Both the position numbers and the translations under genes were made by a program. From Sphyrna mokarran (lineage: Eukaryota): 64,000 nt of DNA. The DNA lies in NCBI GenBank assembly GCA_024679065.1, contig JAGIQG010000004.1, positions 54,498,001 through 54,562,000 on the forward strand, written 5' to 3'. Below the pieces are notes generated by a model that was not told where the DNA came from, did no database searches, and was given only the letters and a program-made list of their open reading frames with translations. Shown piece after piece: positions 1 through 61,700 of this stretch. Each line of letters begins with the position of its first letter. Within the stretch, counting starts at the first letter, position 1.

Positions 1-1780
1 GGTGGGGAAGCTGTTGGAGGGGATTCTTAGAATAGGACGCATAGGCATTGCAATCTGATTAAGGATACGCAGCGTGGCTTTGTTAAGGGGAGGTCGTGCC
101 TTACGAATCTGGTAGAATTTTTTGAGGAGGTGATGAAAATGGTCGATGAAGGGTGAGACACTGATGTCGCCTATATGGATTTCAGTAAGGCGTTTGACAA
201 AGTCCATCATGGGAGGTTAGTTGAAAAGGTCAAGGCTAATGGAATACAAAGACAGGTAGCTAGATGGATAAGTAACTGGCTTGGTAATAGGAAACAGAGA
301 GTACTAGTGGAAGGGTGTTTTTCTAGCTGGAGTTCAGTCACTAGTGGTGTGCCACAGAGCTCAGTATTGGGACCTCTTCTATTTGTAATATATATAAATG
401 ACTTGGAAGAGGGAATAAGTGGAGTGATCAGCAAGTTTGCAGACGATACAAAGATGGCTGGACTTGTGGATAGTGAGGAGCATTGTCAGGCAATACAGCA
501 GGATATAGATAGGCTGGTAGCTTGGACACATAGATGGCAGATGCAATTCAATCCTGATAAATGTTAGGTGATGCATTTCGGGAGTAAGAATGTAGGGGGG
601 AGGTATATGATAAAGGGTAGACCTATTAAGAGTATAGAAACGCAGAGGGACTGAGGGATGCAGGTGCACAAGTCTCTGAAGGTGGCAGAGCAGGTGAAGG
701 TTGTGAAGAAAGCATATGGTATGCTAGCATTTTTAGGAAGGAGTACAAGAGCTGGCCTTTAATGTTGCAGGTGTTTAGAATGTTGGTTAGACCTCATTTG
801 AAATACTGCATCCAGTTCTGGTCGCCCTACTACTGGAAGGACGTGGAGACTCTGGAGAGAGTGCAGAGGAGGTTTACCAGGATGCTGCCTGGTATGGAAG
901 TTCTGAGTTATGAGGAGAGGTTAGGCAAGTTGGGGCTGTTTTCCTTAGAAAGACGTAGACTTAGAGGAGATCTAATAGAGGTGTACAAGATAATGAGGGG
1001 TATAGATAGAGTAAACAATGTTAAGCTTTTTCCTAGGTTGAATTGAAATATCATGAGGGGTCACGGGTTTAGGGTGAGGGGGTAAAATATAATTTGGATG
1101 CTAGAGGGAGTTTTTTCACACAGAGAGTGGTGGGGGTATGGAATGCACTGCCAAGTAAGGTGGTGGAGGCAGGCACTCTGGAGTTATTTAAGAGATACTT
1201 AGATAAGCACATGAACAGAATGGAAATGGAGGGGTATAGAAAACTGATATAAAATAGGGATCATGAGCCTTGGGAGTTTTCTGGGAAGTGTGTAAATTGT
1301 CAACGATATTCCTGTTTTATCCTACAGATACTTCAGTCTGCCTTGTTGTCTAACAAGGGGCATACACGCGATGGGTCATGAGAGGGCTACTCTTGGATTT
1401 TTGGAGAGCAGCCTAGTGCTTCATGTCATTAGTGTATGCTTGAACTGGACCAATTGATAGGCAACACGACAGCTCAGTGCCTATTGCTGTGCTGTGCAGA
1501 TACATGGATATGGGCCTGTGTCTGTGGGAGTTTGCAGATTCTCCCCGCGCTTGCATGAGTTTTCTCTGGTGCTCCTGTTTCCTCCCATACCCCAAAGATG
1601 TGCTCTTAGGCTGATTGGCAAAACAAATTCTCCCTAAATTGTTTTGCAAATTTTGTTGCAATGCATAGATCTATAAACATAGATAGGGATCATGGGTAGA
1701 AGTGAGAACATCGAAGTGGTGGCGTGCGCTCGTTGGGCCGAAGGGCCTGTTTCCCGTGCTGTTTTGTTCTTTGTTCTTTG
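1..1780 (+). mobile_element. CR1-clade LINE, 3' part (RT domain + long 3'UTR), decayed
   Basis: DFSKAFDKV, SGVPQSSVLGPLLFVIYINDL, KFADDTK, LERVQRRFTRM, with in-frame stops; ends in (TTCTTTG)-like repeats; the 3'UTR matches 60830-61290 in reverse. Confidence 0.95.
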
Positions 1781-7771: not shown

Positions 7772-7909
7772 TCAGCTTCTTTCTTTCTTTGTTACGTTCA
7801 CTTCAGCATACAATGCGCGTTTGTTTTGTTTAAGTTTTGATGGGTCCTTGGAATCAGCAAGCTGCAAGGCGGCATATGTCAGCTTGTTATCTCCACTTCT
7901 TTGTTTAGT
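7772..7909 (-). CDS. Terminal coding exon with ITIM LTYAAL and ALYAEV
   Basis: ttttcacag|ACT, phase 0; TKQRSGDNKLTYAALQLADSKDPSKLKQNKRALYAEVNVTKKERS, TGA at 7774-7772. Confidence 0.88.
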   Translation of the reverse strand, partial: TKQRSGDNKLTYAALQLADSKDPSKLKQNKRALYAEVNVTKKERS

Positions 7910-10900
7910 CTGTGAAAATAATATTTAATATCACGGTAAATCCATCGTTCAATCATTATTGAGACAGTTAACATTTTAACAAAAGACTTACGGAATTTCC
8001 TTTCATTAGTACCAATTTCAGATTGTAATTGGACTTTGAACTGGCTTCCTTCTCTGCAGCCCTCCCCTAAATCTTGTTGAAATTCCATTTGAACTTTCAT
8101 GTAAAATGAGTTCGTCTGTAAATATAGCTCATTAAAGAAAGCAGATTAATTATTTGACTAAAGTAGAAAAAGTAATTCTATGCTGCTCTGTTGGGAAAGC
8201 TGATATTACACAACATTGATTTAAGGCCCAATTGTGTGAACATCGACAGCAGCAGTGCCTTGCTTATTTCACGGAGGAAGGCTCCCGCTCAAATTTTTCA
8301 ATCGCCTTACCGCCATTCCCGCTAATCTCCCGATCTCTGGGTCATGAGGCAAAAATGACGAACTTGTTTGAAATCAGCCGACAGAGCACAACTGGGATAT
8401 TAAGCAAGAATCTTCCCATTTCAAGCATCTCAGTGTGGCATCACAGAATATTGATGCCATTACAGTAAATGACCTAAGATGTACCTGGGAATATACGATA
8501 TTCTCCTCCCTCTGTCTGGGGTTCGCCTTTTTCCTGGTGTCAATTTTGACTGTGGCGTAGGCCAGGCTGTTGTCGGTGCCGTTTTCTGTCTGTAAAATAG
8601 ATATTTTTCCACCGGGAATTGGTGAATTTCTTGTTTGGTAGTTTGGGACAAACATTATTCCAGGCAGACCCGAAAAAGAAACGTGGATATTATTGACCCT
8701 GTTTTTGTGTAAAACCGACTACGAGCCCGCTGCCCGATTTGTATCTGTCCAGATTGTTATTTCCAATCAAGTCAGTAGGAGAAATGCCAATTAATAAGGA
8801 CTTGTTGAAATCTATTCCATAAAGACAAAACTTTCCCCAACCCGCTCAGATTCTGAACAATTAATCAACATTGACTCTGTCATATATAGTCATATCGTAG
8901 AATCCATACAGTGCAGAGGAAGACCATTCGGCCTGCATCCACCACAATCCCACCCAGCTTCTATGCCCTTAAATCCATCTAACCCCCACTAAGCCCTTGG
9001 CATTAAGGGATAATTAACTTAACCTGCACATCTCTGGAGTGTAGGAGGAAACCAGAATACTTGGAGGAAACCCACGCCAACATAGGGAGAATATGAATGT
9101 CCAAACTCCACATAAACAGTTACTCGAGGCCGTAATTGAACCCGGGTACCTGGCGTTGTGAGGCAACGGTGCTAACCGCCTAGTTTGAATATTTTTCGCT
9201 TCAATCCCTCAGTCGTACCTGGAAATAGGTGGTGCGCTCTTTCTTGTGTCTCGGTTTGGAGGATCCTTTTTCTTCTCGCACGCTCAGAGTAGCGTAGGCG
9301 GCAATGTCCTCACCTGGCTTTTGTCTAGCCTGTAACAATAAGACACAAAATATTGAAAGCGGCGAATCTGTCTCTATAGCCAGCTACTGTCAATTCTAAT
9401 TAATTCTTCGAAGTAAATATGCAGATAGCAAACGATAAAACTAGGTTGCAAGTGCACTCTCTCTCTCTTCTCGACTGTTGTATCCAATGCCGAACCAATA
9501 GAGTTGAGAGTATTTGTTTTATCAGTTCAAGGGATGTTGGCTTCGCTGGCTAAGCTAACGTATATTGACAGTCGATAATTGCCCTTGAACCGCTCCAGTC
9601 GGCGTGGGATACGTGCGTCCCTGGTGTTTTTAGGGAAGTACTTCTAGGATTCTGACTCAGCAACAGTGAAGGAACTGCGATATTTTTCCAAGCCAGGGTG
9701 GTCGGTGGTTAAGTGGGGAGGTTCAACGTGGTGTTCCTGTACATCTGGCAGCTTTGAGATAGGACGAGTTGGTGCTACTGGAGAGAGAAATCAGTCGGAA
9801 AGAAAAGCAGAACTTTTTCAGATAGGCATTCCTGGAAGATAAGTGGAAATGAAATAAACACGAAGATAAAAACAAAATATTGCAATGCTGGAAGCTGAAA
9901 CAAAATCAGAAAACAATAGAAAATCTCAGTAGGTCTGACAGCATTTGTGGAGAGTGAATAGAACGTTGGCTCTTTTCTGCTTCCACTGATGCTGTCAGAC
10001 CTGCTGAGATTTCCAGCATTTTCTGTTTTTGTCTCAGATTCCAGCATCTGCAGTATTTTACTTTTAGCTTTTGGGTCGTATAGATGACAGTGGTCGTGAG
10101 TTTGGAGGGTGCTATCTAAGAAACGTTAATGAGTTCCCGCAATGTATCTTGCAGATGGTACACACTGCTGTCACGGTGTGTCGGTGGTGGAGGAAGTTTT
10201 CTTTGTGGATCGGTTGCCAATCAAATGTCCTCTTTGTCTTGGATGGTGTAGAGCTTCTTGGTTGTTGTGGAACTGCTCTTATCAAGACAAGTGGAAAGTA
10301 TTTCATCACACACCTCACTTGTGCCTTTTAAATTGTGCACCTGCTTTGGGGAGTCAGGAGATGACATACTCAGTGCTAGATTCTTAGTCTCTGTCCTGCT
10401 GTTGTAGCTGCAATGTTTATGTAAGAATACAATAAACATAACAACTAGGAACAGGAATAGGCAAGTTAGCATCTCTAGCCTGCTCTGCCATTCAGTATGA
10501 TCATGACTGATCTCATTTCAGCCTCATCTGCAGCTTCCTACCCATTCCCCATAATCATTCATCAGAGGGAACAAACCATGTGACACATTACTAGTTTGCC
10601 AAACAGAAAAAAGACCCATTGTTCCCACTCTTTATTTCCTGTTGGTTAGTGAATCCTCTATCCAAACTAATATATTACCCCTAACACAATTTTACCCTTT
10701 ATATTAATCTTTTGTGTGGCATCTTATCAAATGCATTCTGGAAGTCCTATGGAATCTCCTGTAACAATCTCCACTTGTTACACCTTCGAAGAGTTGGTTA
10801 AACATAATTTATCCTTCTTAAAAATATGCTGACTCTGATGGATTGTGTTTTGATTTTCCAAATGTCCCTTTACTACTTTCTTAATAATGTGTTTAAGCAA

Positions 10901-13900
10901 TTTTCCAATGACAGACGTTAAACTGACTGGTTTATAGTTTTCTACTGTTTATATTTCTACATTTTTGAACGGAGGTGTTACAATAGCCATTTCCCATTCT
11001 CCTACAATCCCTATATCGGAGAAGAAGGCCATTTTGTCCATCGATTTTGCACCAAGTCTCTGACAGAACATCTTATCCTGGCCCGCCCCCCATTCCTATT
11101 CCCGTAACCCGATTTATTCACCATAATTCTCTGAAACTACACATCCCGGGACATCTAGGGACAATGTGGTATGGTCTATGCACCTAATCTACTGGAACTT
11201 TTCCAGAATCCAGGGAATTTTGGGACTTCAAACCAGTGCACCCACTATCTCTGCTGCCACCCTCTTTAAGAAGTACGTCATCATGCACTGGAGAATTGTC
11301 TGCCTTTAATCCCAATAGTTCCCTCAGTACTTTTTTCCTCGTGAAGGCGATTATTTTAAATGACTCATTTTGAACCATCACCGCGTTATCTGTTAATATT
11401 GGTATGGTTCTAGCCTGAAAACAGGGTCTAAATATTGATTTAGTGCCACTACCATTTCTATGTTCCCCATTATTAATTCCCAGTCTCCTCCTCTGAGGAA
11501 CTAACCTTGTCTTCAGCTACTTCCTTCCTTTTTACGTAGTGACAGAATCTTTTCCTCTCCGTTTTATATTTGCACTGGATTTGCTGCCATGCAGACATAT
11601 GGCTGGTCTAGTTCAGTTTCTGGCTAATGTTCTAAATATGGAACCCAGAGCGCTTGATAAATTTATCTGCATTTAAAATTGTCACTATTTAGAACATTGC
11701 TAATAATTATATAATTAATAATTTTCCAATTACCTCCAACCGCCCCCCCCCCACACCTCATCGAAGTAACTATTGTCATCTTATTGCAACCTACTGGAAG
11801 ACTTGACTGCGATGCCTGAATTTGTCTTTTTTTCACTTCCAGAAACTTCCGTCCCAAAGTGGAAATCAACAGCCCGGATCCTGGAAAACCCTCATTCCTA
11901 GCATCACTCCTCTCCCTCTGCCTCCCTTACCTCGACTTTCATGCGCCACCATGCACTCTGGAAAGGTTTCAGGCCAATTAAGATACCAGCAGGAGTGTTC
12001 CAGCCTGGCTTAGCCAATACCCCAAAACCTAGGACCTTCCTTGTCTGTCTATCTGTGCGAATACTTTCCACATTCAGCACCTAGATAGCTGGAAATATCC
12101 TTATTTTGAAATAAATTTAAGTTTTTAAGGGGGATTCAACAAGATATAATTGTTGTAAAGTAAATAGTCATCTGGTTCTTAACATAAAGGAATAGTGTAA
12201 AACAAGCGATACTTTCAAACTAGCCAGGCCTCAACTGGAAATTGTGTCCCACTGTGGGAAGGATATCAAGGTTTGGAGAGGAGATTTACTGGAATGTTAC
12301 CAGGGCTGAAGGACTTCAGTTATATGCAGGAAACTAGAGAAATATCATTGTTCTCCTTATAGCAGGGAAAGAATTCTCAGTGGTTTAGTTCGAGCAAACG
12401 GGGCAAAACTGTTACCCTCAGTGGGCTGCTTGCTAACCAGGGGATGCGGATTTTGATAACTGGGGAAGATTAGGATTCTAATCTGCAATGCCCTGACTGA
12501 CTGACTGGCGGATGCCTATTGCATAGAAAGTTTCAGAAAAGGCATTAGAGAAACGTTTAAAAAAATGTCGGTTGTAGGTAAAGCGCATGGGAGTGAGATT
12601 CGCTGAGCATTTATTTCAAAGAAGAAGCACAGCTATTTTCTTTTCATACTATAAAATTTTATGGTTACTTTAAAACTAATTGGTATCTTCCCGGCTGGGT
12701 ATAGAATTTCCTTCTCACTGCCGCCCCCCATTCATCCCCTCACGCCATGTTTTTGTAATACAAAATAAGGCATTGCTATCCTACCTGTTCTTCTGTCTGA
12801 GCCGCTTCCACTGAATTTCTATTATCGCCTAGAAGAGAAAAAAGACATGAGCAACTAAATCAGTGCACAAGCGAAACCAGTATCATGCCTTTGACGCTAA
12901 ACAAATTTGTATAAATTAAGGAAACCAGAATGCTGAAGTTGTTCAGCGGCATCAACGGCAGTGTACTGTGCATTACCTTCTCATTATCCGCAGTGACCCG
13001 CGATACACCTGGTCTACTCAAGTCTTTGCACAATGGCGCGAAGAATTTGATAGGGAATCGTAACACTTTGACAATTTCAAGTTTTCAAAATCCGCTTTAT
13101 GTTGCCATTTTCAAGTCTCAATCACATAACCCTCGTGTGACATTACCTTCATTCTTTAACAATTTTGCAAAGTGCTCTTTATTCCTCTATATTGAATCTA
13201 TGTATTTTAACAGCGTAACCGCGCATGAGAAAATATAATTATGCAGTGCAATGTTAAAGGTACTTACCAGCTGATGCCTTTAATTTGAGCCTCGTCAAAA
13301 TAATTATCAACAGTAAAATAGCCAATGCGCCGCCTGCACATCCGAAAATGAGCGGAAGGTTGACATCACTGTCTACAAGAACAAATGATTGAAATAAGAA
13401 GCTGCGCAACTCATACACAGGTGCAAACGTGTCACTCAGAATAATCGCTCCTATCAGTGGATCTCGACCGCTTTCACTTGTGTGTTGTAGCTAAACAAGG
13501 ATCACATTTATCAAATCACGTAAACTGCACGTTAGTAATGCAATTTATAGAGGAAACACGTTTCATTCCATAACGACGCAATAAGCTTCTCATTGGTAAG
13601 AATGAGGGAATGTTCATTTCTTTCAGCTTGACGCGCTACACCAAACTACTGCGCAATATCACAAAAAGCGGCAAAGGCTTTCATTCTTCAAGTAATCATC
13701 CCTAACCTTACCAGAGCACGTTGTTTTTGAGAGATAGCAAAAGAAACTTGAATACAAATCAGGTACAGGAGGAGGCCATTCTGCCCTGCGACCCAGCTCC
13801 TCTATTTGGCTGATCCGATTGTGGCCTCAACTCTAATTTCCTCTTCATCTCCTTAACTTTTAACTCCATTGTCAATCAAAAATCTATCTAACTCAACCTT

Positions 13901-16900
13901 AAAAAATATTCAATGACCTTGCTCACAACTTTCTGGGAAAGAGAATGCCAAAAACACACCATGTCTTGAGAGAGAGAAAAAAATCGCCCCGTTTTAAATG
14001 GGAGGTCTCTTAATGTTAAAGTGTCCCCTAACATTAGCTCCTACAAGAAAAACCATTTTCTCAGCAATCATCCTGTCAGGTCTCCTCAGGATCTATGTTT
14101 CTGAAAGATCACCCCCATTCTTCTAAACTTCATAGATATATGACCAAGCTGCCCCATCTTCCCTCATAAGATAATATCTTTGTTCCAGGAATCTGTGCAA
14201 TGAAATTGCTTCTAAAGAAATTACATCCTTTCTTAAGTAAGAAGGCAAAACTCCATATGTGTACTCCAGATGAAATGTGCATTTATACAGCGTTTCCAAC
14301 GAAGTAAAACCTCGAAAGATATTTCGCCGAGCATTATCAAACAAAACTGAATACCGACTCACATCACGTAAGCGCAGAAGCTGGGGTTCAAGAACAGTTT
14401 TAAAGAAGCCGGAGCTAGAACGGAGAGCGGTCTCCGAGCATAGGATGTAAACTACTGAGAACAAATTATTTTATTTTATATTTTAAATCTCAGCCAGCAG
14501 GAGACTATTTGGCTCATCATGTTTGCACTGACAACAATGCCATCCAAGCCCTATCCCCGTAGTTGCACATATTTACCCTGCTAATTCACTTGACACTAAG
14601 GATCAATTTAACATCGCCAATCAATCTAACCCGCACATCTTTTTGGAAGGAAACCGGAACACCCGGAGGAAACTAAAGCAGACACTGGGAGAATGTTCAA
14701 ACTCCACACAGTCACCAAAGGCTGGAATTGAGCATGGGTTCTGGCGCTTTAAGACAGCAGTTCTAATCACTGTGCCACCGTGATGATAACAATGACACTC
14801 CCATATATTGAATTGAAATGCTATAATTGCATGATATAAAATTTAATCTTTAAGAACCGATCTGTTTATCTATGTCATTTGGCAAGAATTTTGCGCGGAA
14901 TGAACTTTCAGTCTCAAACAGTTTGCATATCAACCTGCAGACCCAGATCTTTTCAAGCAAATATTCTCCCTCCTCTGGTTCCAAACCACCTTGATTATTT
15001 GCATTTATTCCCATTGATGTGACATTGAGATTGAATAAGGTCCACATTCACCCTATAATTTCAAGTTTGAACAGCTGCCTAGCTACATATCCAATAAATA
15101 ACTACAGGTTGGAGCATTTCCCCCGTTCACTGCTGTAAATGTTTTAAATCTTACCTTGAATATAGCTGACACTGGCGGGCACCTTAAGGGAAATATGAGA
15201 TGCCAGGCATGTATAAACTATTGGACTCTGGACAGGCTGTGCATCTTCCAAAGAACTGGTGACCTCAAAAAGACCATCCATCGTCTTGTTTCTCACAGTT
15301 TCTATTCCGGCCAGAATTTCCACACTATCTCTTCGCCAGGAGATTTTTAAATCCTCCGGGTAAAAGGCAGCCGTTTTACACTCGAACCTCAGAGAAGTCG
15401 CGGAAATCCCTTCGACCTGAATGAGTTTCAGGGGGGTTGGGGGAACTTTAATAGAGAAATATAAGGACTATTAATTGAGCATATTCTAATTCATCGACCA
15501 TCCATTGTGTTGTTACATTCCTAACGTGAGAATAATTGTCCGTGCTATCGTTTTTTTGGAAAAATGAATTCCTGTCTGCATTTATTTTAATTTTTTTTTC
15601 GCCGCGCACAGCAAATTGTTCCAATGTATTGCAAACTGTTTGGATGAATCGCCCAGACCTAGTGATAATTGATAAAACATCTGTCACTGTTCTGAATGGA
15701 AACACAGCTACTGGGATGAGATTAGTTTTTTGCAGCAAAGACCCTGAATGAGATTTCTTGTTCGAATCTATGGTAAACCAGGCACAATCCACTGAATTCT
15801 CTCACATTTTTCTGCAAGAGTCGTGGTCATAATAAACATTCTTATTAAAAATCAATTGTCCGAATATTTCATGTATTGTGAAATATATTTTGTTTTAACA
15901 ATCGATATTGAGAACATATACGTAACTGAAATGTACAATATGCACTGCAAGGACTCAACGTTCCTTAGGCAGCACCTTCCAAGCCATAACGATCACCATC
16001 TAGGAGGACAAGAGCCAAGGAGGTTCCCCTCCAAGTCACTCACCATCCTGACTCGGAAATATATGTACACCAGGGACTGCAGCGGTTCAAAAAGGCGGCT
16101 CACCACCGAGTTCTTAAGGGCAACTAAGGATGGGCAATAAATGCTGGTCCAGTGAATTTTCCGTAAATTAATTTTGAAAAAGCATGCCCAATATCTGTAA
16201 AGATCCCAGGCAAGATATTACTTTATTTATATGTAAAAATCCATGCTTTTATTAAAGAACATTTCTATGAAAGGTGTTTCCGATCGTGTAGCATCCACAA
16301 AAGGAACCGTTCCCAGAGGAGCGACCGAGGGCGAACGCAAATTTTTAATCAGGAAAGGGCTTTATTGTTAATTCTTCATGGGTGTATAGATCACAACATC
16401 CATGCAGAGTGAAGACAAATAAAAACATCTTTACACAGAATGCATGTGTTATATAATTCCATGCGTTTTGCCCGTCTATAATTTCATTTATGGAACATGC
16501 TTGGTCTGGAGAATTTCCTCTCATATCAATCCCACGTTTAAAATTTTCAAATGTGAAATTGTGAAATTGTGTCCGCTTGTTCTATAATCACTGTTTAACT
16601 GGAAGTAAATTCCCTCATTAGGTTACATACATTTGCAAATTATAATCAATCTCCTTAATATATTTTATTTAGAATTCTACTTTGCCGACATTGCAGCAAT
16701 AGCAATTCACACGCATTATTAACTTTTAGAATTATGTTAGTCTTTATTCCCAACAAAGGCTGAGAATTCCTCCATTATTTTCCCAAGGATCTGTTTTAGG
16801 TACATACCAAACAGAATTCCCTCTGGCCGGAAAAAGTCAATGTTCTCTCGGTCTCCTGCCTCAACTTCCTTCTACATATGTTGACTGTGCATGGAAATTA

Positions 16901-19448
16901 CAAATACGGGACCTCAGACGTTCTATAAAATATTCGATGACATCCACTTTACCGGTTGTGAGTGGATCAGAGAAAGTCTTTTTGGTGTATCCCAAAGATA
17001 CAAACAAGGGCCTTGAGCACCTTAACTGTCCTGCAAGGTCTAGGGGTGGAATCCAGCATTGAGGACACGATCAACATATACCCTCTCACTAGTTTGTAGG
17101 ATCTCGTTGTAAAAAGAGTTCGGAATTTCAACCAAATCATTAACGGACACAAGTGCAAAATACAAACTGCGGATAGAGAAACAGGGGTCCATTCGGCCCC
17201 GCTAGCTTACTCTACCATTCCTTTAAGTCATGTCTGGTCCATTTGTCCGACTTAGTTTGATTCTCTTGAAACCTACGATTTATTTCCCTTGATATGCATT
17301 GCAAATTTAGAACTACTCGATTATTCGATTGCAATTTTAAACAGGGACTGACAAGATACTTTGTGTATGGAATACTCATGACTGTAAGTAGGCCAGTTTT
17401 CGCCTGAATGGATACAAGAGGCACCTTATTGGGACGAATAAGATGGTCATTAATTTTGCAGAACTTAGTTAATTTAGGCAGTGTTAAAATCAATCAAAGA
17501 TCGTAAATCTGAAACCTTGACTCTGTCCGCAGATGTTCAATGACTTGTTTTCTGTTTTTATTTCAGGTTCCAAGCATATGAAACATTTTGCTTTTGTACA
17601 AAAATTGTCCTCAGTGTTGAACCTTGGCGCCGTTATTTTGGTGAGAGCAATCTCATCCCGTCGACTAATCGCAAACTGAGATTGCAACATAATCCCGCTT
17701 CATTGTTTTGGTGCAAAAATAGTTGCTACTTCACACAAGGCACACATTGGGTGAAATGTTACGAGGACGCGAGTGGGTGAAATTGATCTTGAGCAATGGC
17801 ACAAAGTGGGCGAGAGGGAATCGAGGGAGGACCATTCTATAACAAGGTCAAGGCAGTGTAAAATAAATCCAGCAGTATAAAATAAATTCATCATTATCAG
17901 GTTTTCATCTAGTGATAGAAGTTCAAATAACATAAGTCACACATAGCTGAAAAGTACCCTTTCCCGGTAGTTTGAAACTTACCGTACACAGTGAGCTGGG
18001 AACCACTTCCATCCCCAATCTTGTTATGTTGATGTTTTACTGAACAGTGATACATTCCGGAGTCTGCAACACTCGCATTCAGAACTTCAAATGAACTACT
18101 GCCCTTCTTTAGATAGATTTTCTTTCTGTTGTCTGATTCCAGAATAGATTCCTCGCCCCGTTTCCACCAAGAAACTTCAGGATCGCTTTCCAGCATGGGA
18201 AATGTGCAGAACATGGAAGCATTTTCACCCCTGGCAACCGTCAAGTGTTTAGGGAACTGATCCACTTTGCTGCAAGTTAGTTTAGCGGCTATAATAAAGA
18301 GTAAAGAAAAGAGTAAAGATGACTAGAAAGAAAAATAATAGAGGAAAAAGAAAGAGACATCAGCAGTCACATTAGATAAGGACAGCATCTATTTTTACAA
18401 TGCATACAGTTGTAGACGTAAAATACAATTTAAGCTGTTCTAAAACGGCGAAGTAAGAACTCAGGTTACCTAGCCAAACCAGGCTCAGAAGAGTCATGTA
18501 CTGAATTGTAACTTTCATCGACATGTTGTCAAGTGAACAAAAAATGATATGGATAATTTTTGTTCAGGAGGAGATATCCTGAATGGTTTGGGCAAGAAAT
18601 TGATTTCTTAGATAAATATATAAAACGGAGAAACCATTATATAGGTTATCACATGACCGAAATAGCCTATTGGTCCCCATTATAACTGTGTGTAAGAATC
18701 TGAAAAGTAGGAGGTCCCTTCCTAACTGCGGGCCTGAAGGCTTCCATCCTGAGAGCAATTTTGTTTCTGCAACTCTCAAGGCAACGCATTCTTGAACACC
18801 CAGGCACAGGCGCGGCTGTCCTCCAACACGTCATCTGAGGATTAGCTGAGCTCCTCAGTCCTTAAATCATTCCAGTAAATCTGTGTTGTATCTATTGAAG
18901 TCCTTTACAACCTTCAGATCTCAAGGAACACTCCAAACTGAGGTTGAGCTGGCGATTTTTAAAAGGTTTAGTACAACTTGCTTGCTGTATCTTGCATGCC
19001 TTGTTTGTCCGGTCACTTTCAAGATTTTGTCCATGCGCCTCGAGACCACTACTTTCAGTGACATTTGCATCGTTTTGGAGATCAATAAAATGGAGTTATT
19101 CTTTTCCTTTCGTCTTCTCATGGGTTGTAAGGATCGCTTGCAAGGCCAATTCCTAACTGTCCTCTTCAGAAGATTATGGCAAGCCTCAGAGTTCCGTCTT
19201 TAGTGGCAGATGTTGGTCGTGGGCATAAAAGTAAGTGATCTAACACAAGAACCAATTAGGGATACAGTGGTGACAATTATACCACTAACACGTCCTCACA
19301 ATGCTATGGTGACATTGATTGATGAAGGATGATGCCCATCTGAACTGTCCTCCCTTATTGAATCCTAGTAATTGACTAACGCTTTACCACTAAGTACGAA
19401 AATCCTATTTACACAGCGACTTACAATGAATAACTTCTGAGGGAGCAT
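7772..19448 (-). CDS. Spliced gene: germline-joined VJ-C1-TM-ITIM immunoglobulin-superfamily receptor (non-rearranging antigen-receptor-like / SIRP-like), 347 aa (351 aa with microexon)
   Basis: Exons 19425-19448, 18470-18500, 17983-18288, 15155-15445, 13268-13372, 12785-12828, (9314-9329), 8485-8589/8585 and 7772-7909 are bounded by GT-AG introns with compatible phases and give one stop-free frame: MLPQKLFIYMTLLSLVWLAAKLTCS-KVDQFP...DSGMYHC...GDGSGSQLTVY-VPPTP...CKTAAFYP...W...YTCLASH...-LPLIFGCAGGALAILLLIIIL-...LAYATV...IVYSQ...LTYAAL...ALYAEV..ERS*. Confidence 0.9.
8485..8589 (-). CDS. Cytoplasmic exon with Tyr motifs LAYATV and IVYSQ
   Basis: ttttacag|ACAG|AAAAC tandem acceptors and CAG|GTACAT donor; TENGTDNSLAYATVKIDTRKKANPRQREENIVYSQ. 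Confidence 0.85.
8895..9180 (-). mobile_element. tRNA-derived SINE (HE1-like)
   Basis: acctgcacatc...ggaggaaacc...aaactccaca...gaacccggg...tgtgaggcaacggtgctaacc; similar copies at 14495-14785, 30250-30525, 31330-31570, 38580-38730 and 48140-48430 (-), and 40748-41070 and 47340-47625 (+). Confidence 0.8.
9314..9329 (-). CDS. Candidate 16-nt cytoplasmic microexon (ARQKP)
   Basis: ttattgttacag|GCTAGACAAAAGCCAG|gtgagg; strong sites, and in frame only when the distal acceptor at 8585 is used. Confidence 0.55.
9860..10065. repeat. Palindromic (hairpin) repeat, probably Penelope-derived, inserted in an older LINE tail
   Basis: aatgctggaa...aaatctcagtaggtctgacagcat / atgctgtcagacctgctgagatttccagcatt; related pieces at 19940-20040, 36640-36735 and 54465-54600. 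Confidence 0.6.
10430..11580 (-). mobile_element. Decayed CR1 LINE with nested SINE (~11010-11185)
   Basis: CR1 3' tail at 10445-10560; ORF2 remnant LLGLKADNSP...SQNSLDSGKVPVD. Confidence 0.7.
12785..12828 (-). CDS. Cytoplasmic exon 1 (GDNRNSVEAAQTEEQ)
   Basis: tttctcttctag|GCG...CAG|gtagga, 44 nt, phase 1->0. Confidence 0.85.
13268..13372 (-). CDS. Transmembrane exon (uncharged TM)
   Basis: ttgtag|ACAGT...GCTG|gtaagt, 105 nt, phase 1-1; DSDVNLPLIFGCAGGALAILLLIIILTRLKLKASA. Confidence 0.92.
13740..14270 (-). mobile_element. CR1 LINE 3' end
   Basis: ggaggccattc tail; YLRKDVISLEA remnant. Confidence 0.7.
15155..15445 (-). CDS. Ig C1-set domain exon
   Basis: 291 nt, phase 1-1, missed by the ORF track; VPPTPLKLIQ...FECKTAAFYPEDLKISWRRD...DGLFEVTSSL...YTCLASHISLKVP carries the C1 hallmarks C-xxxx-FYP, W and YxCxxxH. 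Confidence 0.93.
17983..18288 (-). CDS. VJ-type Ig variable domain exon (germline-joined J-like G strand)
   Basis: Long pyrimidine tract + TAG acceptor and G|GTAAGT donor, 306 nt, phase 1-1; B-strand Cys (SMFC), C-strand Trp (VSWW), DSGMYHC, di-glycine bulge GDGSGSQLTV. Confidence 0.95.
18470..18500 (-). CDS. VJ-C1 receptor leader mini-exon L2 (YMTLLSLVWL, 31 nt)
   Basis: ttcag|TAC...CTAG|gtaac; phase 0->1 links L1 to the V exon and supplies the hydrophobic core of the signal peptide. Confidence 0.75.
19425..19448 (-). CDS. VJ-C1 receptor leader exon L1 (MLPQKLFI)
   Basis: ATG at 19448 and phase-0 donor ATT|GTAAGT; resembles the paralogue leader MLPRKLIL at 37613. Confidence 0.75.
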
Positions 19449-22069: not shown

Positions 22070-24685
22070 AACAAAGAATGAAGAAAAGTACAGCACAGGA
22101 ACAGGCCCTTTGGTCCTTCAAGCCTACAAAACCATGCTGCCCAACTGAAATAAAACTCTCTTTTATTCCAGGGATCATATCCCTCTATTCCTACGTATTT
22201 GTCAAAAAACCCTTAAAAGTCACTATCATATTTGCTTCCACGACCTCTAACCTGGGAGCGAGTTCCAGGCATCCACTACCCTCTGTGTAAAAACAAAACT
22301 TGCCTTGTACATCTCCTTTAATCTCTGCCTCACGCATCATAAACCTATGCCCTCTAGTTATTGACTCTTCCACCTGATCTGACTATCAACTCTGTCCACA
22401 CTACTCATAATCTTGTAGACTTCTATCAGGTTGCCCCCTCAACCTCTGTCATTCCAGCAAAATCAAACCAAGTTTCTCCAATCTTACCTCATAATTTACG
22501 TCCTCCATACCAGGCAACATTCTGGTAAATTTTTTCTGTACCCTTTCCAAAGCCTCCACATCCTTCTGATAGCATGGTGACCAGAAATAACACTATATTC
22601 CAAGTGTGGCCTAACTGAGGTTCTATGAAACTGCAGCATGACTTGCCAATTTTTAAACTCAATGCTCTGGCTAATGAAGCCAAGCAAGCCATTTGCCTTC
22701 TTGACTACCTTATCCACCTGCGATGCCACTTTCAGTGCCTGTGTACCTGCATTTCCAGATCCCTCTGCCTATCAATACTCTTCAGGGTTCTGCCATTTAT
22801 TGTGTATTTCCCAACCATATTACACCTTCCAAAATGCATTACCTCGCATTTGTCTAGATTAAACTCCATCTGCCATCTGACTGCCCATGTCTCCAACTGA
22901 TCCATATCCTGCTTTATCCTCTGATGGCCCTCATTGCTATACACAATCCAACAACATTTTGTGTCATGTGTAAACTTACTAATCAAAGCAGTTACATTTT
23001 CCTCCAAATCATTTATATATATTACAAACAGTAAAGGTCTCAGCACTGATCCCTGAGGGACACCACTTGTCAGAACCCTCCATTCTGAAACACACCCTTC
23101 CACTGCTACCCTCTGCCTTCTATGACGAAGCCAGTCCTGCATCTGCTTTGCCAGATCACCTCTGATCCTGCGGACTTCACCTTCTGTACCAGTCTACCAT
23201 GAGAGATCTTGTCAAAGGCCTTACTGAAGTCCACGTAGGCAACACCCACTGTCTTTCTCTCATCAATCATCTTCATTGCTTCCTCAAAAAACTTGATGAA
23301 GTTAGTGAAAGACAACCTCCCTTCACAAAACCATGTTGCCGCTAGCTAATACATCCACTTAATTCCAGTGGGAGTAAATCCTGTCTCAAAGAACCCTCTT
23401 CAATAATTTCCCACGACTGATGTAAAGCTCACTAGCCTGTAATTACCTGTAATATCCTTGCTACCCTTCTTAAACAAAGGAAAAACATTGGTTATTCTGC
23501 AATCTTCTGGGACTTCTCCACTACAGTAAGAAGTCTCACAACACCAGGTTAAAGTCCAACAGTTTATTTGGTAGCACAAGCCACAAGCTTTAGGAGCACT
23601 GCCCCTTCATCAGGACTCACAAAACTTACCTGTTGAAATAAACCTGCGATCAAATAAACTTGTTGGACTTTAGCCTCTCGTTCTGAGACTTATTGCTGTG
23701 TTTACTCCAGTCCAATGCCAGCATCTCCACATCATGATCTTCCTTGCAGCCAATGAGGATGCAAAGACTTCTCTCAAGGCCCCAGCAGTTTCCTCCCTTG
23801 CCTCTCTCAATATTCTGTGATATATCCCTTCTGACCCTGGGGACTTAATTACTTTAACTTTTCTGAAGAACCCCAATACTTCCTCCTTTTTAATCTCAAC
23901 ATGATCCAAACTATCCTTCTCTTTGGTTAATATTGATGCAAAGTACTTATTTACATCTCGCCCATTTCCTCTGGCTCCATGCGTAGATTCCCTCCCCTGT
24001 CCTTGAATGGGCCAAACCTCACCCTGGCTACCCTCTTGCTGTTTATATATGGATAAAGAGCCTTGGGATTTTCCTCAATCCTGCTGGCAAATAACTTTTT
24101 GTGACCCCCTTTAACCAGCCTTACTCCTTGCTTAAGTTTCTTTCTACTTTCCTCGTATTCCACATTTGGTTCATGTGTTCCCAGTCTCTTAGCCTTGACA
24201 AATGCTTCTTTTTTCTCTTTGACTAGGCTCACAATATCTCTCTTATCCAAGTTTCCCGAAACTTGGCAAACATATCCTTCATCCTTACAGGAATGTGCTG
24301 GCCTTGAATTTCTGTCAACCTACACTTGAAAGCCTGCCACACATATCAGCTGTTGATTTGTCCTCAAACGTCTGCCCCAATCTACATTTTTCAGTTCCTG
24401 CCTAATATTATTGTAATTAGCCTTGCCCAATTTAGCTCATTCACTAGAAGATTGCGTTTTCTTTATCCGTCAGTACGTTAAAGCTTGCTGAATTGTAGGC
24501 ACTGTTCCTGAACTGCTCCCGTACCAAAACATTGACCAGCTGACCAGGATCATTCCCCAATACTAGATCTAGTATGGCCCCTTCCCTAGTTGGACAATCT
24601 ACATACTGTTTCAAGAGGGCCTGCTGGATACTCCTTACAAACTTTGCCCCATGCTCGCTCCTAGCACGAAGTGAGCCCAATCAGT
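22070..24685 (-). mobile_element. CR1 LINE ORF2 (endonuclease C-terminus + RT), nested inside an older plus-strand CR1 3' end (21915-22065 / 24720-24870)
   Basis: PTREGAILDLVL, DFSKAFDKISH, SGVPQGSVLRPLLFVIYINDL, WQMEFNLDKCEVMHFG; frameshifted. Confidence 0.92.
23524..23737. mobile_element. Short Penelope terminal-repeat (inverted pLTR) insertion within CR1
   Basis: cagtaagaagtctcacaacaccaggttaaagtccaac ... ttggacttta ... ccagtccaatgccagcatctccacatcatga, same termini as 51905-54289. Confidence 0.75.
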
Positions 24686-58700: not shown

Positions 58701-61700
58701 TGCTAACTGCACATCAATAAAATTGTTTGTAAACTGTATTGAGTGAAAGGATCAGGTATCATGCTACAAATGCAAACAGGTATTTTTGAATGGTGTAATG
58801 TTAAGGGATTTGTGTACAACAAATGGATCAGATATACTGGAGAGATGTAAGGCAAGAGAATCACTGCATAACAGAGAGGAATGGCACACTAGAGTTAGAT
58901 GAAAGAAGGAAAAAGTTAACTTGCATTTATGGGATGCCTTTTCACATCCCAGAACATGCCAAAATCTTTTACTACCACTAACGCAATTTTGAAATATTGT
59001 CAATGAGTAATGTAGGAAGGCTGTTATGCGGCAGAATTCTTGGAAGGACACAGCTTGAAGTGATCCTAGTGCAAGAGCAATCCTGAAAAGATGTCAGGTG
59101 AAGTGATTCTTGTGCAGAAAACATATTTGAAATCCACCAGAAAAGGTGATCTCTTGTGAAGGAGCCTTTCCAGAATGATATAGGACAAGTAAATTATTTG
59201 TCAATCCACTTACAATTGCAAATATCAATTTAAGTCTCTTGGAATAGGCCATAGATTGCGCTCATCTTTTAATGTCTGAGTAATTACTGATGTAGTCAAT
59301 GGAGATGGAGTGGGGAAAAAAATAACCAAGTTCCATTTTGTGATACATGAAATCTGCAGCTCCAGTGTGATGTAATTATGGAAGTAAATATTTACACTGA
59401 GCTGGCAAAGGGTGATAATCAGAAATAATTGAATTTTTAGACATCAGTAATCAAATGGAGCTAATAAGGGAAAGGTATATTTTTAGGCAGAGTTAACATA
59501 TTGAGATTCTAAGTATGAATATTGTGTTTTTTTTTCCCTTTTTCACAGTCCGATGACCTGCGAAAGGAAAAAGGATATCATATCTCAGCATTAAGGTGAG
59601 TTTGTGTGAATCCATCTTTTCTGAGCTTGCTCAGGGCAAAATTTGAACCAGATTATTGGACTGAAAAATTTTGTATTTTCATGCATGTTTAATTTGTTGC
59701 AGCACTGATTTTCAGTTGAGTTTTTTTTCCAGTGTGCTTTGTGTATGCTGAGCAGCTGAGATGGACATCTCTGTGAGCAAGCTGCTGCTGCGTACTGAGG
59801 TGAAATGTAATAGAAATGTTAGCTGCAAGATTCACTGGCAAAAAATGAACTCAATTTTTAATATTGAATTCAACTAAGCCATCTTGCTGTGCAGAAGCAT
59901 ATTTATTGTTGTTTTTATTAAGTTCACGACTTCTTAGACTGACATTTACTTTTGTGTAAACTCTGGGAATCCCATGTAACTATTTCCTACTTTTTTAAAA
60001 GAAAAGTTTTCTCGTTTTGTTTGCTCTCATTCTAGTACTTTGTTTCTAAGACTGATTATAATTAAATTCATCTCCATCATGCAGATTCGATTAATCCTTG
60101 CCCTTATTGCTGTAGGTATATTTTTCTTTACTCTTTCATGGGGTATGGATTTGGTTAGAAAGGCGAGATGTTAATGTCCATCGTTAATCGTCCTTGAACT
60201 AGCTAGCTTGCTGGACCATTTTAGCGGCATTTAAGAGTCAGCATATTCCAGTGGATCTGGATTCACAAGTAGGTCAAACCAGATAATGATTTCCTTCTGC
60301 CAAAGGGCATTAGTGAACAGATGAGTTTTTACAGCATTCAGTGACAATTGCTATGGGCACCAACTAGCTTTGCATTCTAGTTTATTAACTGAGTATAAAT
60401 TCCATCAACTGCTGTGCTGGGACTTAAAGCTATGTCCACTGAATATTAGCCTGGGTCTCTGGATTAGTCCTGTGATGTGACCACTTGCTACTATTCCTCT
60501 TACTGATGGTGATTGTGGCTCTGGCCAAGCCTCATACACTTTATCATGGTCTCTCCAAATGTTTACTGACAGACCCTGAATCATATTTCCTTTTTGAAAC
60601 ATTCACTGATGGTCTTACTGCCATGTTGTACTGTGTTCCCTCCAACACTTTCAGTGAGTAAACTGTTCATAACACAAGGTAATGCAAAAGAAAATCCTTT
60701 CCACTTAGTCTGTGAGCACTGACCAATATTTTAATAACTATAACATTTGTATTTCGCTGCTATTGCCTAGCACATTATCAAAACATAAAGAAATATTCAT
60801 GAATGACTTTTCCACAGTACATTTCAAAGAGCAACACAGCACGGGAAACAGGCCCTTCGGCCCAACGAGCCCGTGCCGCCGTCATAACTTTATAGTAACA
60901 ATTCCATTTTCTTATTCTAATTTTAGGTTATTCCTAATATGGAAGAATCTCAATATAGGGTCAATTTGTTTCCCAATCAGCCTAAGAGCGAATTTTTGGG
61001 ATGTGGGAGGAAACCGGAGCGCCCGGAGAAAACCCACGCAACCACGGGGAGAACGCGCAAACTCCCGCAGACACCGGCCCAATTCCAAGTGCCTGCACAG
61101 CTACAGCGATAGTCACTGAGCTGTCATGCTGCCCTTCAGATGGTCCAGATAAAGCACTCATTTACGACATGAAGCACCAGGCAACCCATGAATCAACATC
61201 CAAGAGCTGTCCTCGCACCACCTGCCGAATGCATGCTCCTTGTTGGTCAAGTTGGACCGAATTACCTGTGGGGAAAAAAAAAGTCATAGTTAAACAGTCC
61301 TACTATATCCCTCTATCTGCATACCGCTCATGTGGCTGTCCAAGAGACCCTTAAACAGCCCTAGCGTGCCTGCTCCCACCACCTTACTCGGCAGTGCATT
61401 CCACACCCCCACTACCCTTTTGTGTGAAAAACTGCCCTCTAATATTCGTCTTATACATAGCCCCCCTCACCCTAAGGCTATGACCCCTCGTCCTATCCAT
61501 TTCTGAAGGTGGAAAAAGTTTACCACCATTTACTCTATCTATACCCCTTATAATCTTATACACCTCTATTAGTTCCCCTCTAAGCCGACGTCTTTCAAGG
61601 GAAAACAATCCCAGTCTATTCAATCGTTCCTCATAAGACAGTCCTTCCATACCAGGCAGCATCCTGGTAAATTCTCTGACACTTTGTGCAAAATTGTGAT

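What the first reader, a model, noticed from the sequence alone, without database searches (positions are those of the whole stretch)
7772..19448. Intact non-rearranging antigen-receptor-like VJ-C1 inhibitory receptor
Seen: a complete spliced ORF whose ectodomain has the domain plan of a TCR or Ig light chain, a V domain with a J-like GxG strand plus a single C1 domain. V and J are fused in one germline exon, no RSS was found, and the TM is followed by four Tyr motifs. Established: C1-set domains are nearly confined to Ig, TCR, MHC, b2m, tapasin, SIRP and B7-H6-type molecules; mammalian SIRPalpha is V-C1-C1 with four tail tyrosines; NKp30 is a lone VJ domain. Inference: this is a shark inhibitory receptor resembling the hypothesised pre-RAG ancestor of antigen receptors. 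It may belong to the non-rearranging VJ-C1 families reported in cartilaginous fish or to an undescribed one; I cannot tell without a search.
Basis: partly seen in the sequence, partly recalled or inferred. Interest (0 to 1): 0.88.

Follow-up and report, generated by a model that had tools for sequence, protein, structure and literature searches.

The report
Shark SIRP-like VJ-C1 inhibitory receptor gene
This is an intact shark gene for a cell-surface receptor with an antibody-like outer part and an inhibitory tail, one ordinary member of a large receptor family found in all cartilaginous fishes that databases already label as SIRP-alpha-like.

Summary
The gene is real and lies on the minus strand. 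It has one exon encoding a V-type domain with a germline-joined J-like strand, one C1-set exon, an uncharged transmembrane exon and Tyr-motif tail exons. No RSS was found.

Homology to natural shark proteins places the split leader at 18524-18470 rather than 19448. It also adds a 44-nt cytoplasmic exon and uses three duplicated tail exons. The total is 8 exons, 384 codons and six tyrosines, not 347 aa and four.

The gene is not unique. It falls in a well-supported elasmobranch clade of a chondrichthyan-wide multigene family with inhibitory and activating-like forms. RefSeq names family members inconsistently as SIRP-alpha-like, B7-H6-like, tapasin-related-like or Ig-lambda-like.

Among solved structures, a catshark/horn-shark-type family member scores about equally against SIRP-alpha and Ig lambda light chains. 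The C1 exon alone is nearest B7-H6 and UrIg2.

The most likely function is a SIRP-alpha-type inhibitory receptor that recruits SHP-1/2. That is inferred, not shown.

No RNA run was listed, so expression and splicing are untested. The scan's other notes report many similar loci in this genome; I did not check them.

The parts
18470..18524 (-). Exon 1: split leader. ATG at 18524, 55 nt, phase-1 donor G|gtaacc.
   Evidence: tblastn of natural relatives: leaders of 7 of 8 queries match 18524-18474 (6 of them over 17 aa at 53-65% identity). ATG and donor read.
18289..18469 (-). Leader intron, 181 nt, pyrimidine-rich at its 3' end.
   Evidence: Sequence. With the phase-1 donor, the acceptor at 18322 runs into a stop, while the one at 18288 stays open (read).
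17983..18288 (-). Exon 2: compact V/I-type Ig domain with a germline-joined J-like G strand (G-x-G bulge). 306 nt, phase 1-1.
   Evidence: Pfam I-set 44.1, ig 42.1, V-set 39.0 bits. AF2 pLDDT 92.4, G strand split at residues 93-95, no C'' strand. VIA Z 14.2-14.9 to NCAM2 Ig1, TCR V-alpha and shark VNAR. 64-71% identical to catshark and horn-shark relatives.
15155..15445 (-). Exon 3: C1-set Ig domain, 291 nt, phase 1-1.
   Evidence: Pfam C1-set 29.0 bits, cut-off 21. PDB sequence hits UrIg2, B7-H6, MHC II beta. AF2 pLDDT 92.8. VIA Z 14.7-15.9: 49 of 50 rows are MHC II beta-2 and 1 is UrIg2. Wide search: MHC II, UrIg2, B7-H6 (32% identity), Ig CL, SIRP-gamma d3 within about 1 Z.
13268..13372 (-). 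Exon 4: stalk, uncharged transmembrane segment and basic stop-transfer. 105 nt, phase 1-1.
   Evidence: Sequence. 93% identical over 29-30 aa to horn-shark P0151 and P0163.
12785..12828 (-). Exon 5: 44-nt cytoplasmic exon that shifts the phase from 1 to 0.
   Evidence: Splice-site and open-frame scan. Sequence. 81% identical over 16 aa to catshark P0166.
9219..9329 (-). Exon 6 (tail module A): two Tyr 23 residues apart, both non-canonical.
   Evidence: 53% identical over 38 aa to P0151.
8485..8589 (-). Exon 7 (tail module B): canonical ITIM (L-x-Y-x-x-V) plus a second Tyr 22 residues on.
   Evidence: Weak match to the same module of P0164 and 42% over 31 aa to P0151. AG/GT sites listed.
7772..7909 (-). 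Exon 8 (tail module C): canonical ITIM (L-x-Y-x-x-L) plus an A-x-Y-x-x-V motif 22 residues on, then the stop codon.
   Evidence: 76-80% identical over 45 aa to horn-shark proteins. Poly(A) signals 515 and 891 nt downstream.
19425..19448 (-). Not supported.
   Evidence: It has an ATG and a gtaagt donor, but none of the 8 natural relatives laid on the window matches it.

Best explanation
The locus is an intact, germline-joined (non-rearranging) gene for a type I membrane receptor. Its plan is split leader, compact V/I-type domain with a J-like G strand, one C1-set domain, an uncharged TM segment, and a cytoplasmic tail built from three duplicated two-tyrosine modules.

It is an inhibitory member of a chondrichthyan-wide, tandemly clustered family of paired receptors. 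That family has ITIM-tailed forms and short-tailed forms with charged TM residues.

It most likely works like SIRP-alpha. The VJ domain binds a ligand. Src-family kinases then phosphorylate the tail tyrosines. The paired phosphotyrosines, 22-23 residues apart, dock the tandem SH2 domains of SHP-1/SHP-2, which damp ITAM-driven activation, possibly that of activating family members with similar ectodomains.

Shown here: gene structure, domain types, family membership. Inferred: expression, phosphorylation, SHP recruitment and ligand.
For: - Gene structure: 8 exons, all with AG/GT sites and matching phases, summing to 1155 nt. Exon-by-exon homology to natural shark proteins: V 64-71%, C1 70-74%, TM 93%, last tail exon 76-80%.
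- Conserved residues: the window's exons keep the columns that are invariant in the 54-row family alignments (W40, D75, C81 in V; W36, C79, H83 in C1).
- Domain types: Pfam, PDB sequence searches, AF2 models at pLDDT 92, structural neighbours.
- Family size: 352 representative clusters at E<=1e-3 and 119 at E<=1e-10 for the C1 exon. Of the best 150, 90 are short V/C1-type proteins: 29 with ITIM-like tails, 5 with a '..DH' TM plus a short tail, 56 truncated or without a motif.
- Taxa: all 20 short members looked up are chondrichthyan. So are 31 of 31 hits and 36 of 37.
- Placement: the window gene sits in an elasmobranch clade of 17-18 rows (SH-aLRT 98-99). In the V tree it is sister to two catshark proteins (97).
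- SIRP likeness: the family profile gives SIRP-alpha 107 bits and SIRP-gamma 95 bits, the best non-antibody, non-UrIg2, non-titin hits. P0151 alone gives SIRP-alpha 44 bits. The top two Atlas clusters are SIRP-alpha-like at 0.96, with 205 of 256 shared features.
Against: - No RNA evidence.
- Only 2 of the 6 tail tyrosines sit in canonical ITIMs. Two conserved ones end in ...Y-x-Q-T across the splice junction.
- Queried alone, the C1 exon does not place SIRP among its best 60 PDB hits. B7-H6 and UrIg2 lead. Likewise the V exon alone finds I-set proteins and TCR V, not SIRP V.
- Ig lambda light chains score nearly as well as SIRP-alpha (88-91 vs 107 bits with one extra domain; 35-42 vs 44 bits).
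- No SIRP sequence could be obtained from the tools, so there is no tree. No conserved flanking gene lies in the window, so there is no synteny test.
- Ligand and cell type are unknown.
Confidence: 0.75

Rival explanations
1. It is a B7-H6-type (NCR3LG1-like) ligand, a V-C1 member of the B7 family displayed to be read by an NKp30-like receptor, rather than a receptor itself.
For: B7-H6 is the best single-domain PDB sequence match of the C1 exon (35.3 bits over residues 7-91). It is also the structural neighbour with the highest identity (32%, Z 14.2). RefSeq names several family members 'natural cytotoxicity triggering receptor 3 ligand 1-like'. Pfam's butyrophilin Ig-C model scores 26.9 bits, just under its cut-off of 27.
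Against: The N-terminal domain has a J-like G strand with a G-x-G bulge. Its neighbours are TCR V-alpha, VNAR, CD79b and I-set domains, and no B7 V domain is among the 50 rows. The family has ITIM-rich tails and charged-TM, short-tailed twins, which is the signature of paired receptors. Against whole-protein and profile searches, SIRP-alpha and Ig light chains score best, not B7-H6.
Confidence: 0.07
2. It is a silent or recently dead family member: the open frame is intact but the gene is not expressed.
For: No RNA run was listed. A decayed paralogue lies 16 kb away in the same window, so gene death does occur in this cluster. Module A has lost the canonical residue at Y-2.
Against: All 8 exons are open with canonical splice sites. 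All family-invariant residues are kept. The branch lengths of the window gene (0.21-0.23) are at or below the tree medians.
Confidence: 0.1
3. The first reader's exon model is the true transcript or a real isoform: leader at 19448 spliced to 18322, a different small cytoplasmic exon, and only two tail modules, giving 347 aa and four Tyr.
For: The 19448 exon has an ATG and a gtaagt donor and reads open into the V exon. A 35-nt open candidate exon with AG/GT sites exists at 9777-9743. By my arithmetic on lengths+340+291+105+35+111+138 = 1044 nt = 347 codons plus stop. Natural relatives do show isoforms that skip tail modules, for example P0163 with one module.
Against: None of the 8 natural relatives matches the 19448 exon or the 35-nt exon, while 7 of 8 match the 18524 leader and P0166 matches the 44-nt exon at 81%.
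Confidence: 0.08
4. It is a genuine relic of the pre-RAG antigen-receptor chain, closer to the Ig/TCR ancestor than SIRPs are. It would be comparable to UrIg/UrIg2 but with an inhibitory tail.
For: It has a split leader with a short intron, a single VJ exon and a C1 exon, as in antigen-receptor genes. Lambda light chains align across V and C contiguously. UrIg2 is among the top hits (128 bits; Z 14.9).
Against: It belongs to a multigene, fast-diverging family, unlike UrIg (PMC12227049, section 7). The V domain is compact and I-set-like. SIRP-alpha scores at least as well as light chains.
Confidence: 0.1

Closest known systems
SIRP-alpha / SIRP-beta (SHPS-1 family) of tetrapods
   Same: N-terminal V-type domain with a J-like strand followed by C1-set domain(s). 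Uncharged TM. Tail with tyrosines arranged in pairs. Activating short-tailed counterparts with a charged TM within the same family. Best non-antibody, non-UrIg2, non-titin PDB hit of the family profile (107 bits). Top Atlas clusters. The commonest RefSeq name for family members.
   Different: One C1 domain instead of two. Three tyrosine pairs instead of two (the SIRP-alpha tail layout is recalled, not checked). The V domain is compact and lacks C''. The single exons do not find SIRP among their best 60 PDB hits. Orthology, synteny and CD47 binding are untested.
B7-H6 (NCR3LG1)
   Same: V-C1-TM plan. Its C1 domain is the closest single solved domain by sequence (35.3 bits) and by identity in structure alignment (32%).
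   Different: The window's N-terminal domain carries a J-like G strand and resembles TCR V, VNAR and I-set domains, not B7 V domains. The family has ITIM pairs and activating twins.
UrIg / UrIg2 (non-rearranging shark VJ-C genes; PMC12227049, abstract and section 7 read)
   Same: Single VJ exon, canonical split leader, C1-type domains, cartilaginous fish. UrIg2 is a top PDB hit.
   Different: Nurse shark UrIg2 has one VJ and nine C domains, and the paper describes each as one gene per species. The window gene has one C1 and an ITIM tail, and belongs to a multigene family.
Ig lambda light chains and TCR chains
   Same: V(J)-C1 plan with a split leader. Lambda chains align contiguously over V and C (88-91 bits; 35-42 bits). 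TCR V-alpha domains are tied top structural neighbours of the V exon at 25-31% identity.
   Different: V and J are fused in the germline and there is no RSS. The gene has a TM segment and an ITIM tail. The V domain has no C'' strand.
NKp30 (NCR3), PRARP, NITR, CD79b (other germline VJ-type IgSF receptors, listed together in PMC11599192, passage read)
   Same: Germline-joined VJ-type domain. CD79b is a structural neighbour (Z 13.6, 23% identity).
   Different: As far as I recall, NKp30, chicken PRARP and CD79b lack a C1 domain, and NITRs (teleosts) have no C1-set domain. None of this was tested here because no sequences were available from the tools.

Membership tests
SIRP family | N-terminal V-type Ig domain with a germline J-like G strand | tested here: met
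   One exon runs continuously from Y-x-C to G-x-G-S-x-L-T-V. V-set 39.0 bits, I-set 44.1 bits. The G strand is split by a bulge in the AF2 model.
SIRP family | Membrane-proximal C1-set domains (two in mammalian SIRP-alpha) | tested here: inconclusive
   Exactly one C1-set exon. Some family members in skate and chimaera have two (P0008, P0177). The kind is met but the number differs.
SIRP family | Cytoplasmic paired tyrosine motifs that bind SHP-1/SHP-2 | not testable with these tools
   Three modules each carry two Tyr 22-23 residues apart, and two are canonical ITIMs. Binding needs an experiment.
SIRP family | Common descent with tetrapod SIRPs (phylogeny or synteny) | not tested
   No SIRP sequence was obtainable as a stored protein. 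The window holds no conserved flanking gene, only reverse-transcriptase fragments. Similarity scores only.
SIRP family | Activating counterparts with a charged TM and a short tail | tested here: met
   Catshark P0003 and P0167 and sevengill P0168 have an Arg and a '..DH' in the TM and short tails, and they sit in the same clade as the window gene. The in-window twin is decayed.
Rearranging antigen receptors (IgL/TCR) | Separate V and J segments flanked by RSS | tested here: not met
   V and J are contiguous in one exon. No RSS-like site lies in the gene, and 1 lies in the window against 0.96 expected.
Rearranging antigen receptors (IgL/TCR) | Split leader, V domain, C1 domain | tested here: met
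   181-nt leader intron in phase 1. C1-set exon.
UrIg / UrIg2 | One VJ followed by several C domains, described as one gene per species | tested here: not met
   One C1 exon only, and a multigene family. The feature is taken from PMC12227049, section 7.
B7-H6 / B7 family | B7-type V domain paired with a C domain | tested here: inconclusive
   The C1 is closest to B7-H6. The V exon's best 60 PDB sequence hits and the 50 structural rows of each search hold no B7 V domain. Absence from a list is not exclusion.
NKp30 (NCR3) | A single VJ domain with no C domain (recalled) | tested here: not met
   A C1-set exon is present.

The most novel reading that the evidence does not exclude
The chondrichthyan VJ-C1 family to which this gene belongs may be a still-undescribed third lineage of non-rearranging antigen-receptor-like genes, beside SIRPs and UrIg/UrIg2. 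It scores about as well against Ig lambda light chains as against SIRP-alpha. It has expanded into tandem clusters of inhibitory and activating pairs, which would make it the cartilaginous-fish counterpart of KIR, LILR or NITR-type polymorphic receptor systems. It would also push the VJ-C1 plus ITIM architecture back to the gnathostome ancestor.
Probability: 0.3. Interest if true: 0.7.

Novelty: new member of a known kind. Interest (0 to 1): 0.4.

Why it matters
The gene itself is an ordinary member of its family. The family is what is worth a specialist's look. It consists of germline-joined VJ-C1 receptors with SIRP-type tails and activating twins, and it is present from chimaera to sharks and rays. 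RefSeq names it inconsistently after five unrelated molecules, and I found no paper on it in six full-text searches.

If it proves to be the SIRP orthologue group, the SIRP system predates bony vertebrates. If it proves to be a separate lineage, it adds a candidate to the small set of relics used to reconstruct the pre-RAG antigen receptor.

Tried and rejected
- A SIRP reference sequence for trees. P0085 (tortoise, 453 aa) was tested against the PDB as a possible SIRP but matched IgA/IgG heavy chains and CD276, so I dropped it. The word-indexed homologue searches returned only chondrichthyan relatives plus one fish PTK7. No domain tree against SIRP, Ig, TCR or B7 was therefore possible.
- Synteny. 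The 10 longest other ORFs I scanned gave only two reverse-transcriptase fragments.
- Literature. Searches for UrIg, PRARP (only unrelated uses of the acronym among the 15 rows listed), SIRP with cartilaginous fish and C1-set, SIRP/shark/nonrearranging/ITIM, B7H6/NKp30/shark and VJ-C1 found no paper describing this family. Subscription papers are not searched. PMC10530332 (UrIg 2023), PMC3709836 (B7H6/NKp30 2012) and PMC4594805 were not held, so they may bear on novelty. Supplementary files S1-S9 of PMC10751288 list shark chromosome annotations and may include these genes, but supplements are closed.
- Rejected readings. UrIg/UrIg2 membership is rejected because the gene has one C1, an ITIM tail and a multigene family. 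NKp30 is rejected because a C1 is present. A rearranging gene is rejected because there is no RSS.
- The Atlas search with the V exon alone gave only generic V/I-set clusters.


Full report
What is there.

The finding lies on the minus strand. Stop-free stretches and the raw sequence show four kinds of exon:
- an Ig exon whose F strand (Y-x-C) runs without interruption into a J-like G-x-G-S-x-L-T-V strand and ends at a phase-1 gtaagt donor;
- a second Ig exon with the Y-x-C-x-x-x-H signature;
- an exon with an uncharged hydrophobic segment followed by basic residues;
- three similar exons that each carry two tyrosines, the last ending in a stop at 7772.

Pfam scores the first Ig exon as I-set 44.1, ig 42.1 and V-set 39.0 bits. 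It scores the second as C1-set 29.0 bits (cut-off 21) and butyrophilin Ig-C 26.9 bits (cut-off 27). The TM exon and the three tail exons match nothing. A scan for RSS-like heptamer, spacer and nonamer found none in the gene. It found one in the whole 64-kb window (at 59775), against 0.96 expected from shuffles. The core of the observation therefore holds: a germline-joined VJ-type exon, one C1 exon, a TM segment, tyrosine motifs and no RSS.

The exon model.

Every exon was searched apart, and natural full-length relatives were laid on the window instead.

tblastn of eight natural shark proteins places the leader at 18524-18474 in seven of the eight. In six of them the match covers 17 residues at 53-65% identity. 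The sequence there has an ATG and a phase-1 donor at 18470. The matching acceptor is at 18288, which gives a 181-nt leader intron, the canonical split leader. It must splice to 18322, inside the pyrimidine tract of the leader intron, and the Ser/Leu/Phe-rich translation of that tract merely looks like a signal peptide.

The TM exon ends in phase 1, but the tail exons start in phase 0. A splice-site and open-frame scan offered a 44-nt exon at 12828-12785. It is 81% identical over 16 residues to the catshark protein P0166 and corresponds to the same segment of horn-shark P0151. P0151 (380 aa) then carries the same three tail modules in the same order.

The homology-supported set is 8 exons of 55+306+291+105+44+111+105+138 = 1155 nt. 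That is 384 codons plus stop, with AG/GT at every junction. Relatives do show isoforms that skip tail modules (P0163), so a four-Tyr isoform is possible.

Of the six tyrosines, two are in canonical ITIMs (L-x-Y-x-x-V in module B and L-x-Y-x-x-L in module C). Two are ITIM-like with Ala at Y-2. Two end in Y-x-Q followed by Thr across the splice junction. Within each module the tyrosines lie 22-23 residues apart (counted on the output).

Domain types.

AF2 models of the two Ig exons, each with a 54-row family alignment, are confident at pLDDT 92.4 and 92.8.

The N-terminal domain has strands A, A', B, C, a one-residue C', D, E, F and a G strand split by the G-x-G bulge. It has no C'' strand, and only 53 residues lie between its cysteines. 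Its structural neighbours are tied at Z 14.2-14.9: NCAM2 Ig1, TCR V-alpha (25-31% identity) and shark VNAR domains. The Foldseek-independent search adds basigin, CD79b and titin. SIRP V and NKp30 are not among the 50 rows of either list, which does not exclude them. It is best described as a compact V/I-type domain with a J-like strand.

The second domain is a C1-set fold. In one search, 49 of the 50 rows are MHC class II beta-2 domains (Z 14.7-15.9, rmsd 1.1-2.4) and one is UrIg2. In the wide search, MHC II beta, UrIg2 C3 (29% identity), B7-H6 C1 (32%), Ig CL and SIRP-gamma d3 (23%) fall within about 1 Z of each other.

By sequence, the C1 exon's best PDB hits are UrIg2 (51.1 bits summed over three domains, best domain 26.9) and B7-H6 (one domain, 35.3 bits). 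IgA, MHC II beta, IgNAR C and TAPBPR follow. The V exon finds titin and NCAM (I-set) first, then TCR alpha and beta V domains at about 1e-4 over its full length.

The family.

An exhaustive HMMER search of 1.84 billion representatives with the C1 exon found 352 clusters at E<=1e-3, 119 at E<=1e-10 and 5 at E<=1e-30. The best 150 break down as follows:
- 90 are short V/C1-type proteins. Of these, 29 have ITIM-like tails, 5 have a TM ending in '..DH' with a short tail, and 56 are truncated or without a motif.
- 56 are proteins of 500 aa or more with repeated domains.
- 4 are shorter proteins with three or more C1-like domains.

All 20 short proteins that I looked up are chondrichthyan. The species are Heterodontus, Scyliorhinus, Chiloscyllium, Mustelus, Heptranchias, Pristis, Mobula (two species), Hypanus, Narcine, Amblyraja and Callorhinchus. 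The 10 others looked up are a white-shark 'titin-like' protein, uncharacterised proteins from five frog species, and proteins from a skate, reedfish, a catfish and a tortoise.

Word-indexed searches with natural P0151 and with a 47-member profile returned 31 of 31 and 36 of 37 chondrichthyan hits. They add Carcharodon, Stegostoma, Hemiscyllium, Chiloscyllium plagiosum, Scyliorhinus torazame, Hemitrygon and a Pristiophorus-type sawshark. These searches are limited by the word index and by length, so the absence of bony-vertebrate relatives there proves nothing.

The source names are inconsistent: 'tyrosine-protein phosphatase non-receptor type substrate 1-like' (SIRP-alpha), 'signal-regulatory protein beta-1-like', 'natural cytotoxicity triggering receptor 3 ligand 1-like', 'tapasin-related protein-like', 'immunoglobulin lambda-1 light chain-like', 'M1-specific T cell receptor beta chain-like' and 'HLA class II ... 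beta chain-like'.

Within a species, the members listed share one contig length (for example 99,651,266 for all horn-shark members and 198,790,641 for the catshark). This suggests one chromosomal cluster per species.

Placement of the window gene.

It is 64-71% (V) and 70-74% (C1) identical to catshark P0166 and P0167 and to horn-shark P0151. In quick IQ-TREE trees of 54 rows (106 V columns, 98 C1 columns) it sits in an elasmobranch clade of 17-18 rows with SH-aLRT 98-99. In the V tree it is sister to the two catshark proteins (97). That clade mixes ITIM-tailed and activating-like proteins of the same species, the pattern expected of paired receptors. The species of the window was not identified.

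Unchecked notes of this scan report further VJ-C1 genes 22, 37 and 149 kb before the window and 37 kb beyond it, and on other pieces of the genome.

What it is like.

A profile of 47 family members against all PDB sequences ranks, in order: an IgA1 heavy chain (133 bits), UrIg2 (128), an antibody construct, titin, another heavy chain, SIRP-alpha (107 bits, with V and the first C1 in one contiguous stretch), SIRP-gamma (95) and lambda light chains (88-91). Multi-domain chains add up scores, so SIRP-alpha with its extra C1 and the light chains are effectively level.

P0151 alone gives titin 55.8 bits, SIRP-alpha 44.0 bits and lambda light chains 35-42 bits. The language-model Atlas puts two SIRP-alpha-like clusters first for P0151 (0.96, 205 of 256 shared features). 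This is a lead, not a test.

The layout of the SIRP-alpha tail, two pairs of Y-A-D-L-type and Y-A-S-I/V-type motifs, is what I recall; it was not checked here. If that is right, the shark modules look like the same unit repeated three times.

UrIg and UrIg2 (PMC12227049; abstract and section 7 read) share the single VJ exon and the split leader. However, nurse shark UrIg2 has nine C domains, and neither is described there as a multigene family. PMC10751288 (passages read) says VJ-C1-type genes are known in tetrapods and names UrIg and NKp30 as the non-rearranging relics of the shark MHC. It does not mention this family in the passages I saw. PMC11599192 (passage read) lists CD79, NITR, SIRP, CD8, NKp30 and PRARP as the known joined-VJ genes.

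Mechanism.

Shown: the architecture of an inhibitory IgSF receptor, and the existence of activating-like relatives. Inferred by analogy with SIRP-alpha and other ITIM receptors: ligand binding by the VJ domain, Src-family phosphorylation of the tail, docking of the tandem SH2 domains of SHP-1/SHP-2 on tyrosine pairs 22-23 residues apart, and damping of ITAM signalling.

What counts against this reading: there is no RNA evidence at all, only two motifs are canonical, the ligand and cell type are unknown, and SIRP orthology is untested.

Verdict.

The gene is a new member of a known kind: a SIRP-like VJ-C1 inhibitory receptor from a family that genome annotation already carries under assorted names. 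In the literature I could search, the family appears uncharacterised. Interest is moderate, and it rests on the family rather than on this locus.

Noticed in passing
window 35218-37613, minus strand: A decayed paralogue of the same family. The V-like pieces lie in three different frames with an in-frame stop in place of the conserved Trp-Trp motif. The C1-like pieces lie in two frames, with the invariant Trp replaced. No TM or tail exon was looked for. The scan has a separate note on it (s1-886616).
   Followed up: partly
window 175-564 (+) and 22735-23142 (-): Reverse-transcriptase (RVT_1) fragments at 64.9 and 41.2 bits, i.e. retroelement debris between the receptor genes. The other 8 of the 10 long ORFs I scanned matched no Pfam family.
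   Followed up: no
proteins P0012, P0013, P0018, P0052, P0073, P0038: Uncharacterised proteins of 923-2158 aa from five frog species and reedfish. They match the shark C1 exon in up to 12 stretches each, which points to large arrays of V/C1-like repeats of unknown function in bony vertebrates.
   Followed up: no
family members: All listed members of a given species share one contig length, suggesting a single chromosomal cluster. The white-shark member P0184 lies on a 193.5-Mb contig, while the white-shark MHC is on chromosome 19 (PMC10751288, Fig. 2 legend). That subfamily is therefore probably not MHC-linked. This is an inference from chromosome size only.
   Followed up: no
window 18289-18322, minus strand: The pyrimidine tract at the 3' end of the leader intron translates into a Ser/Leu/Phe-rich stretch that mimics a signal-peptide core. 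This is a trap for reading exon starts by eye.
   Followed up: yes
window 59775, minus strand: The only RSS-like heptamer, 24-nt spacer and nonamer in the window, with 1 and 2 mismatches. Shuffles give 0.96 per window, so it is chance level.
   Followed up: yes
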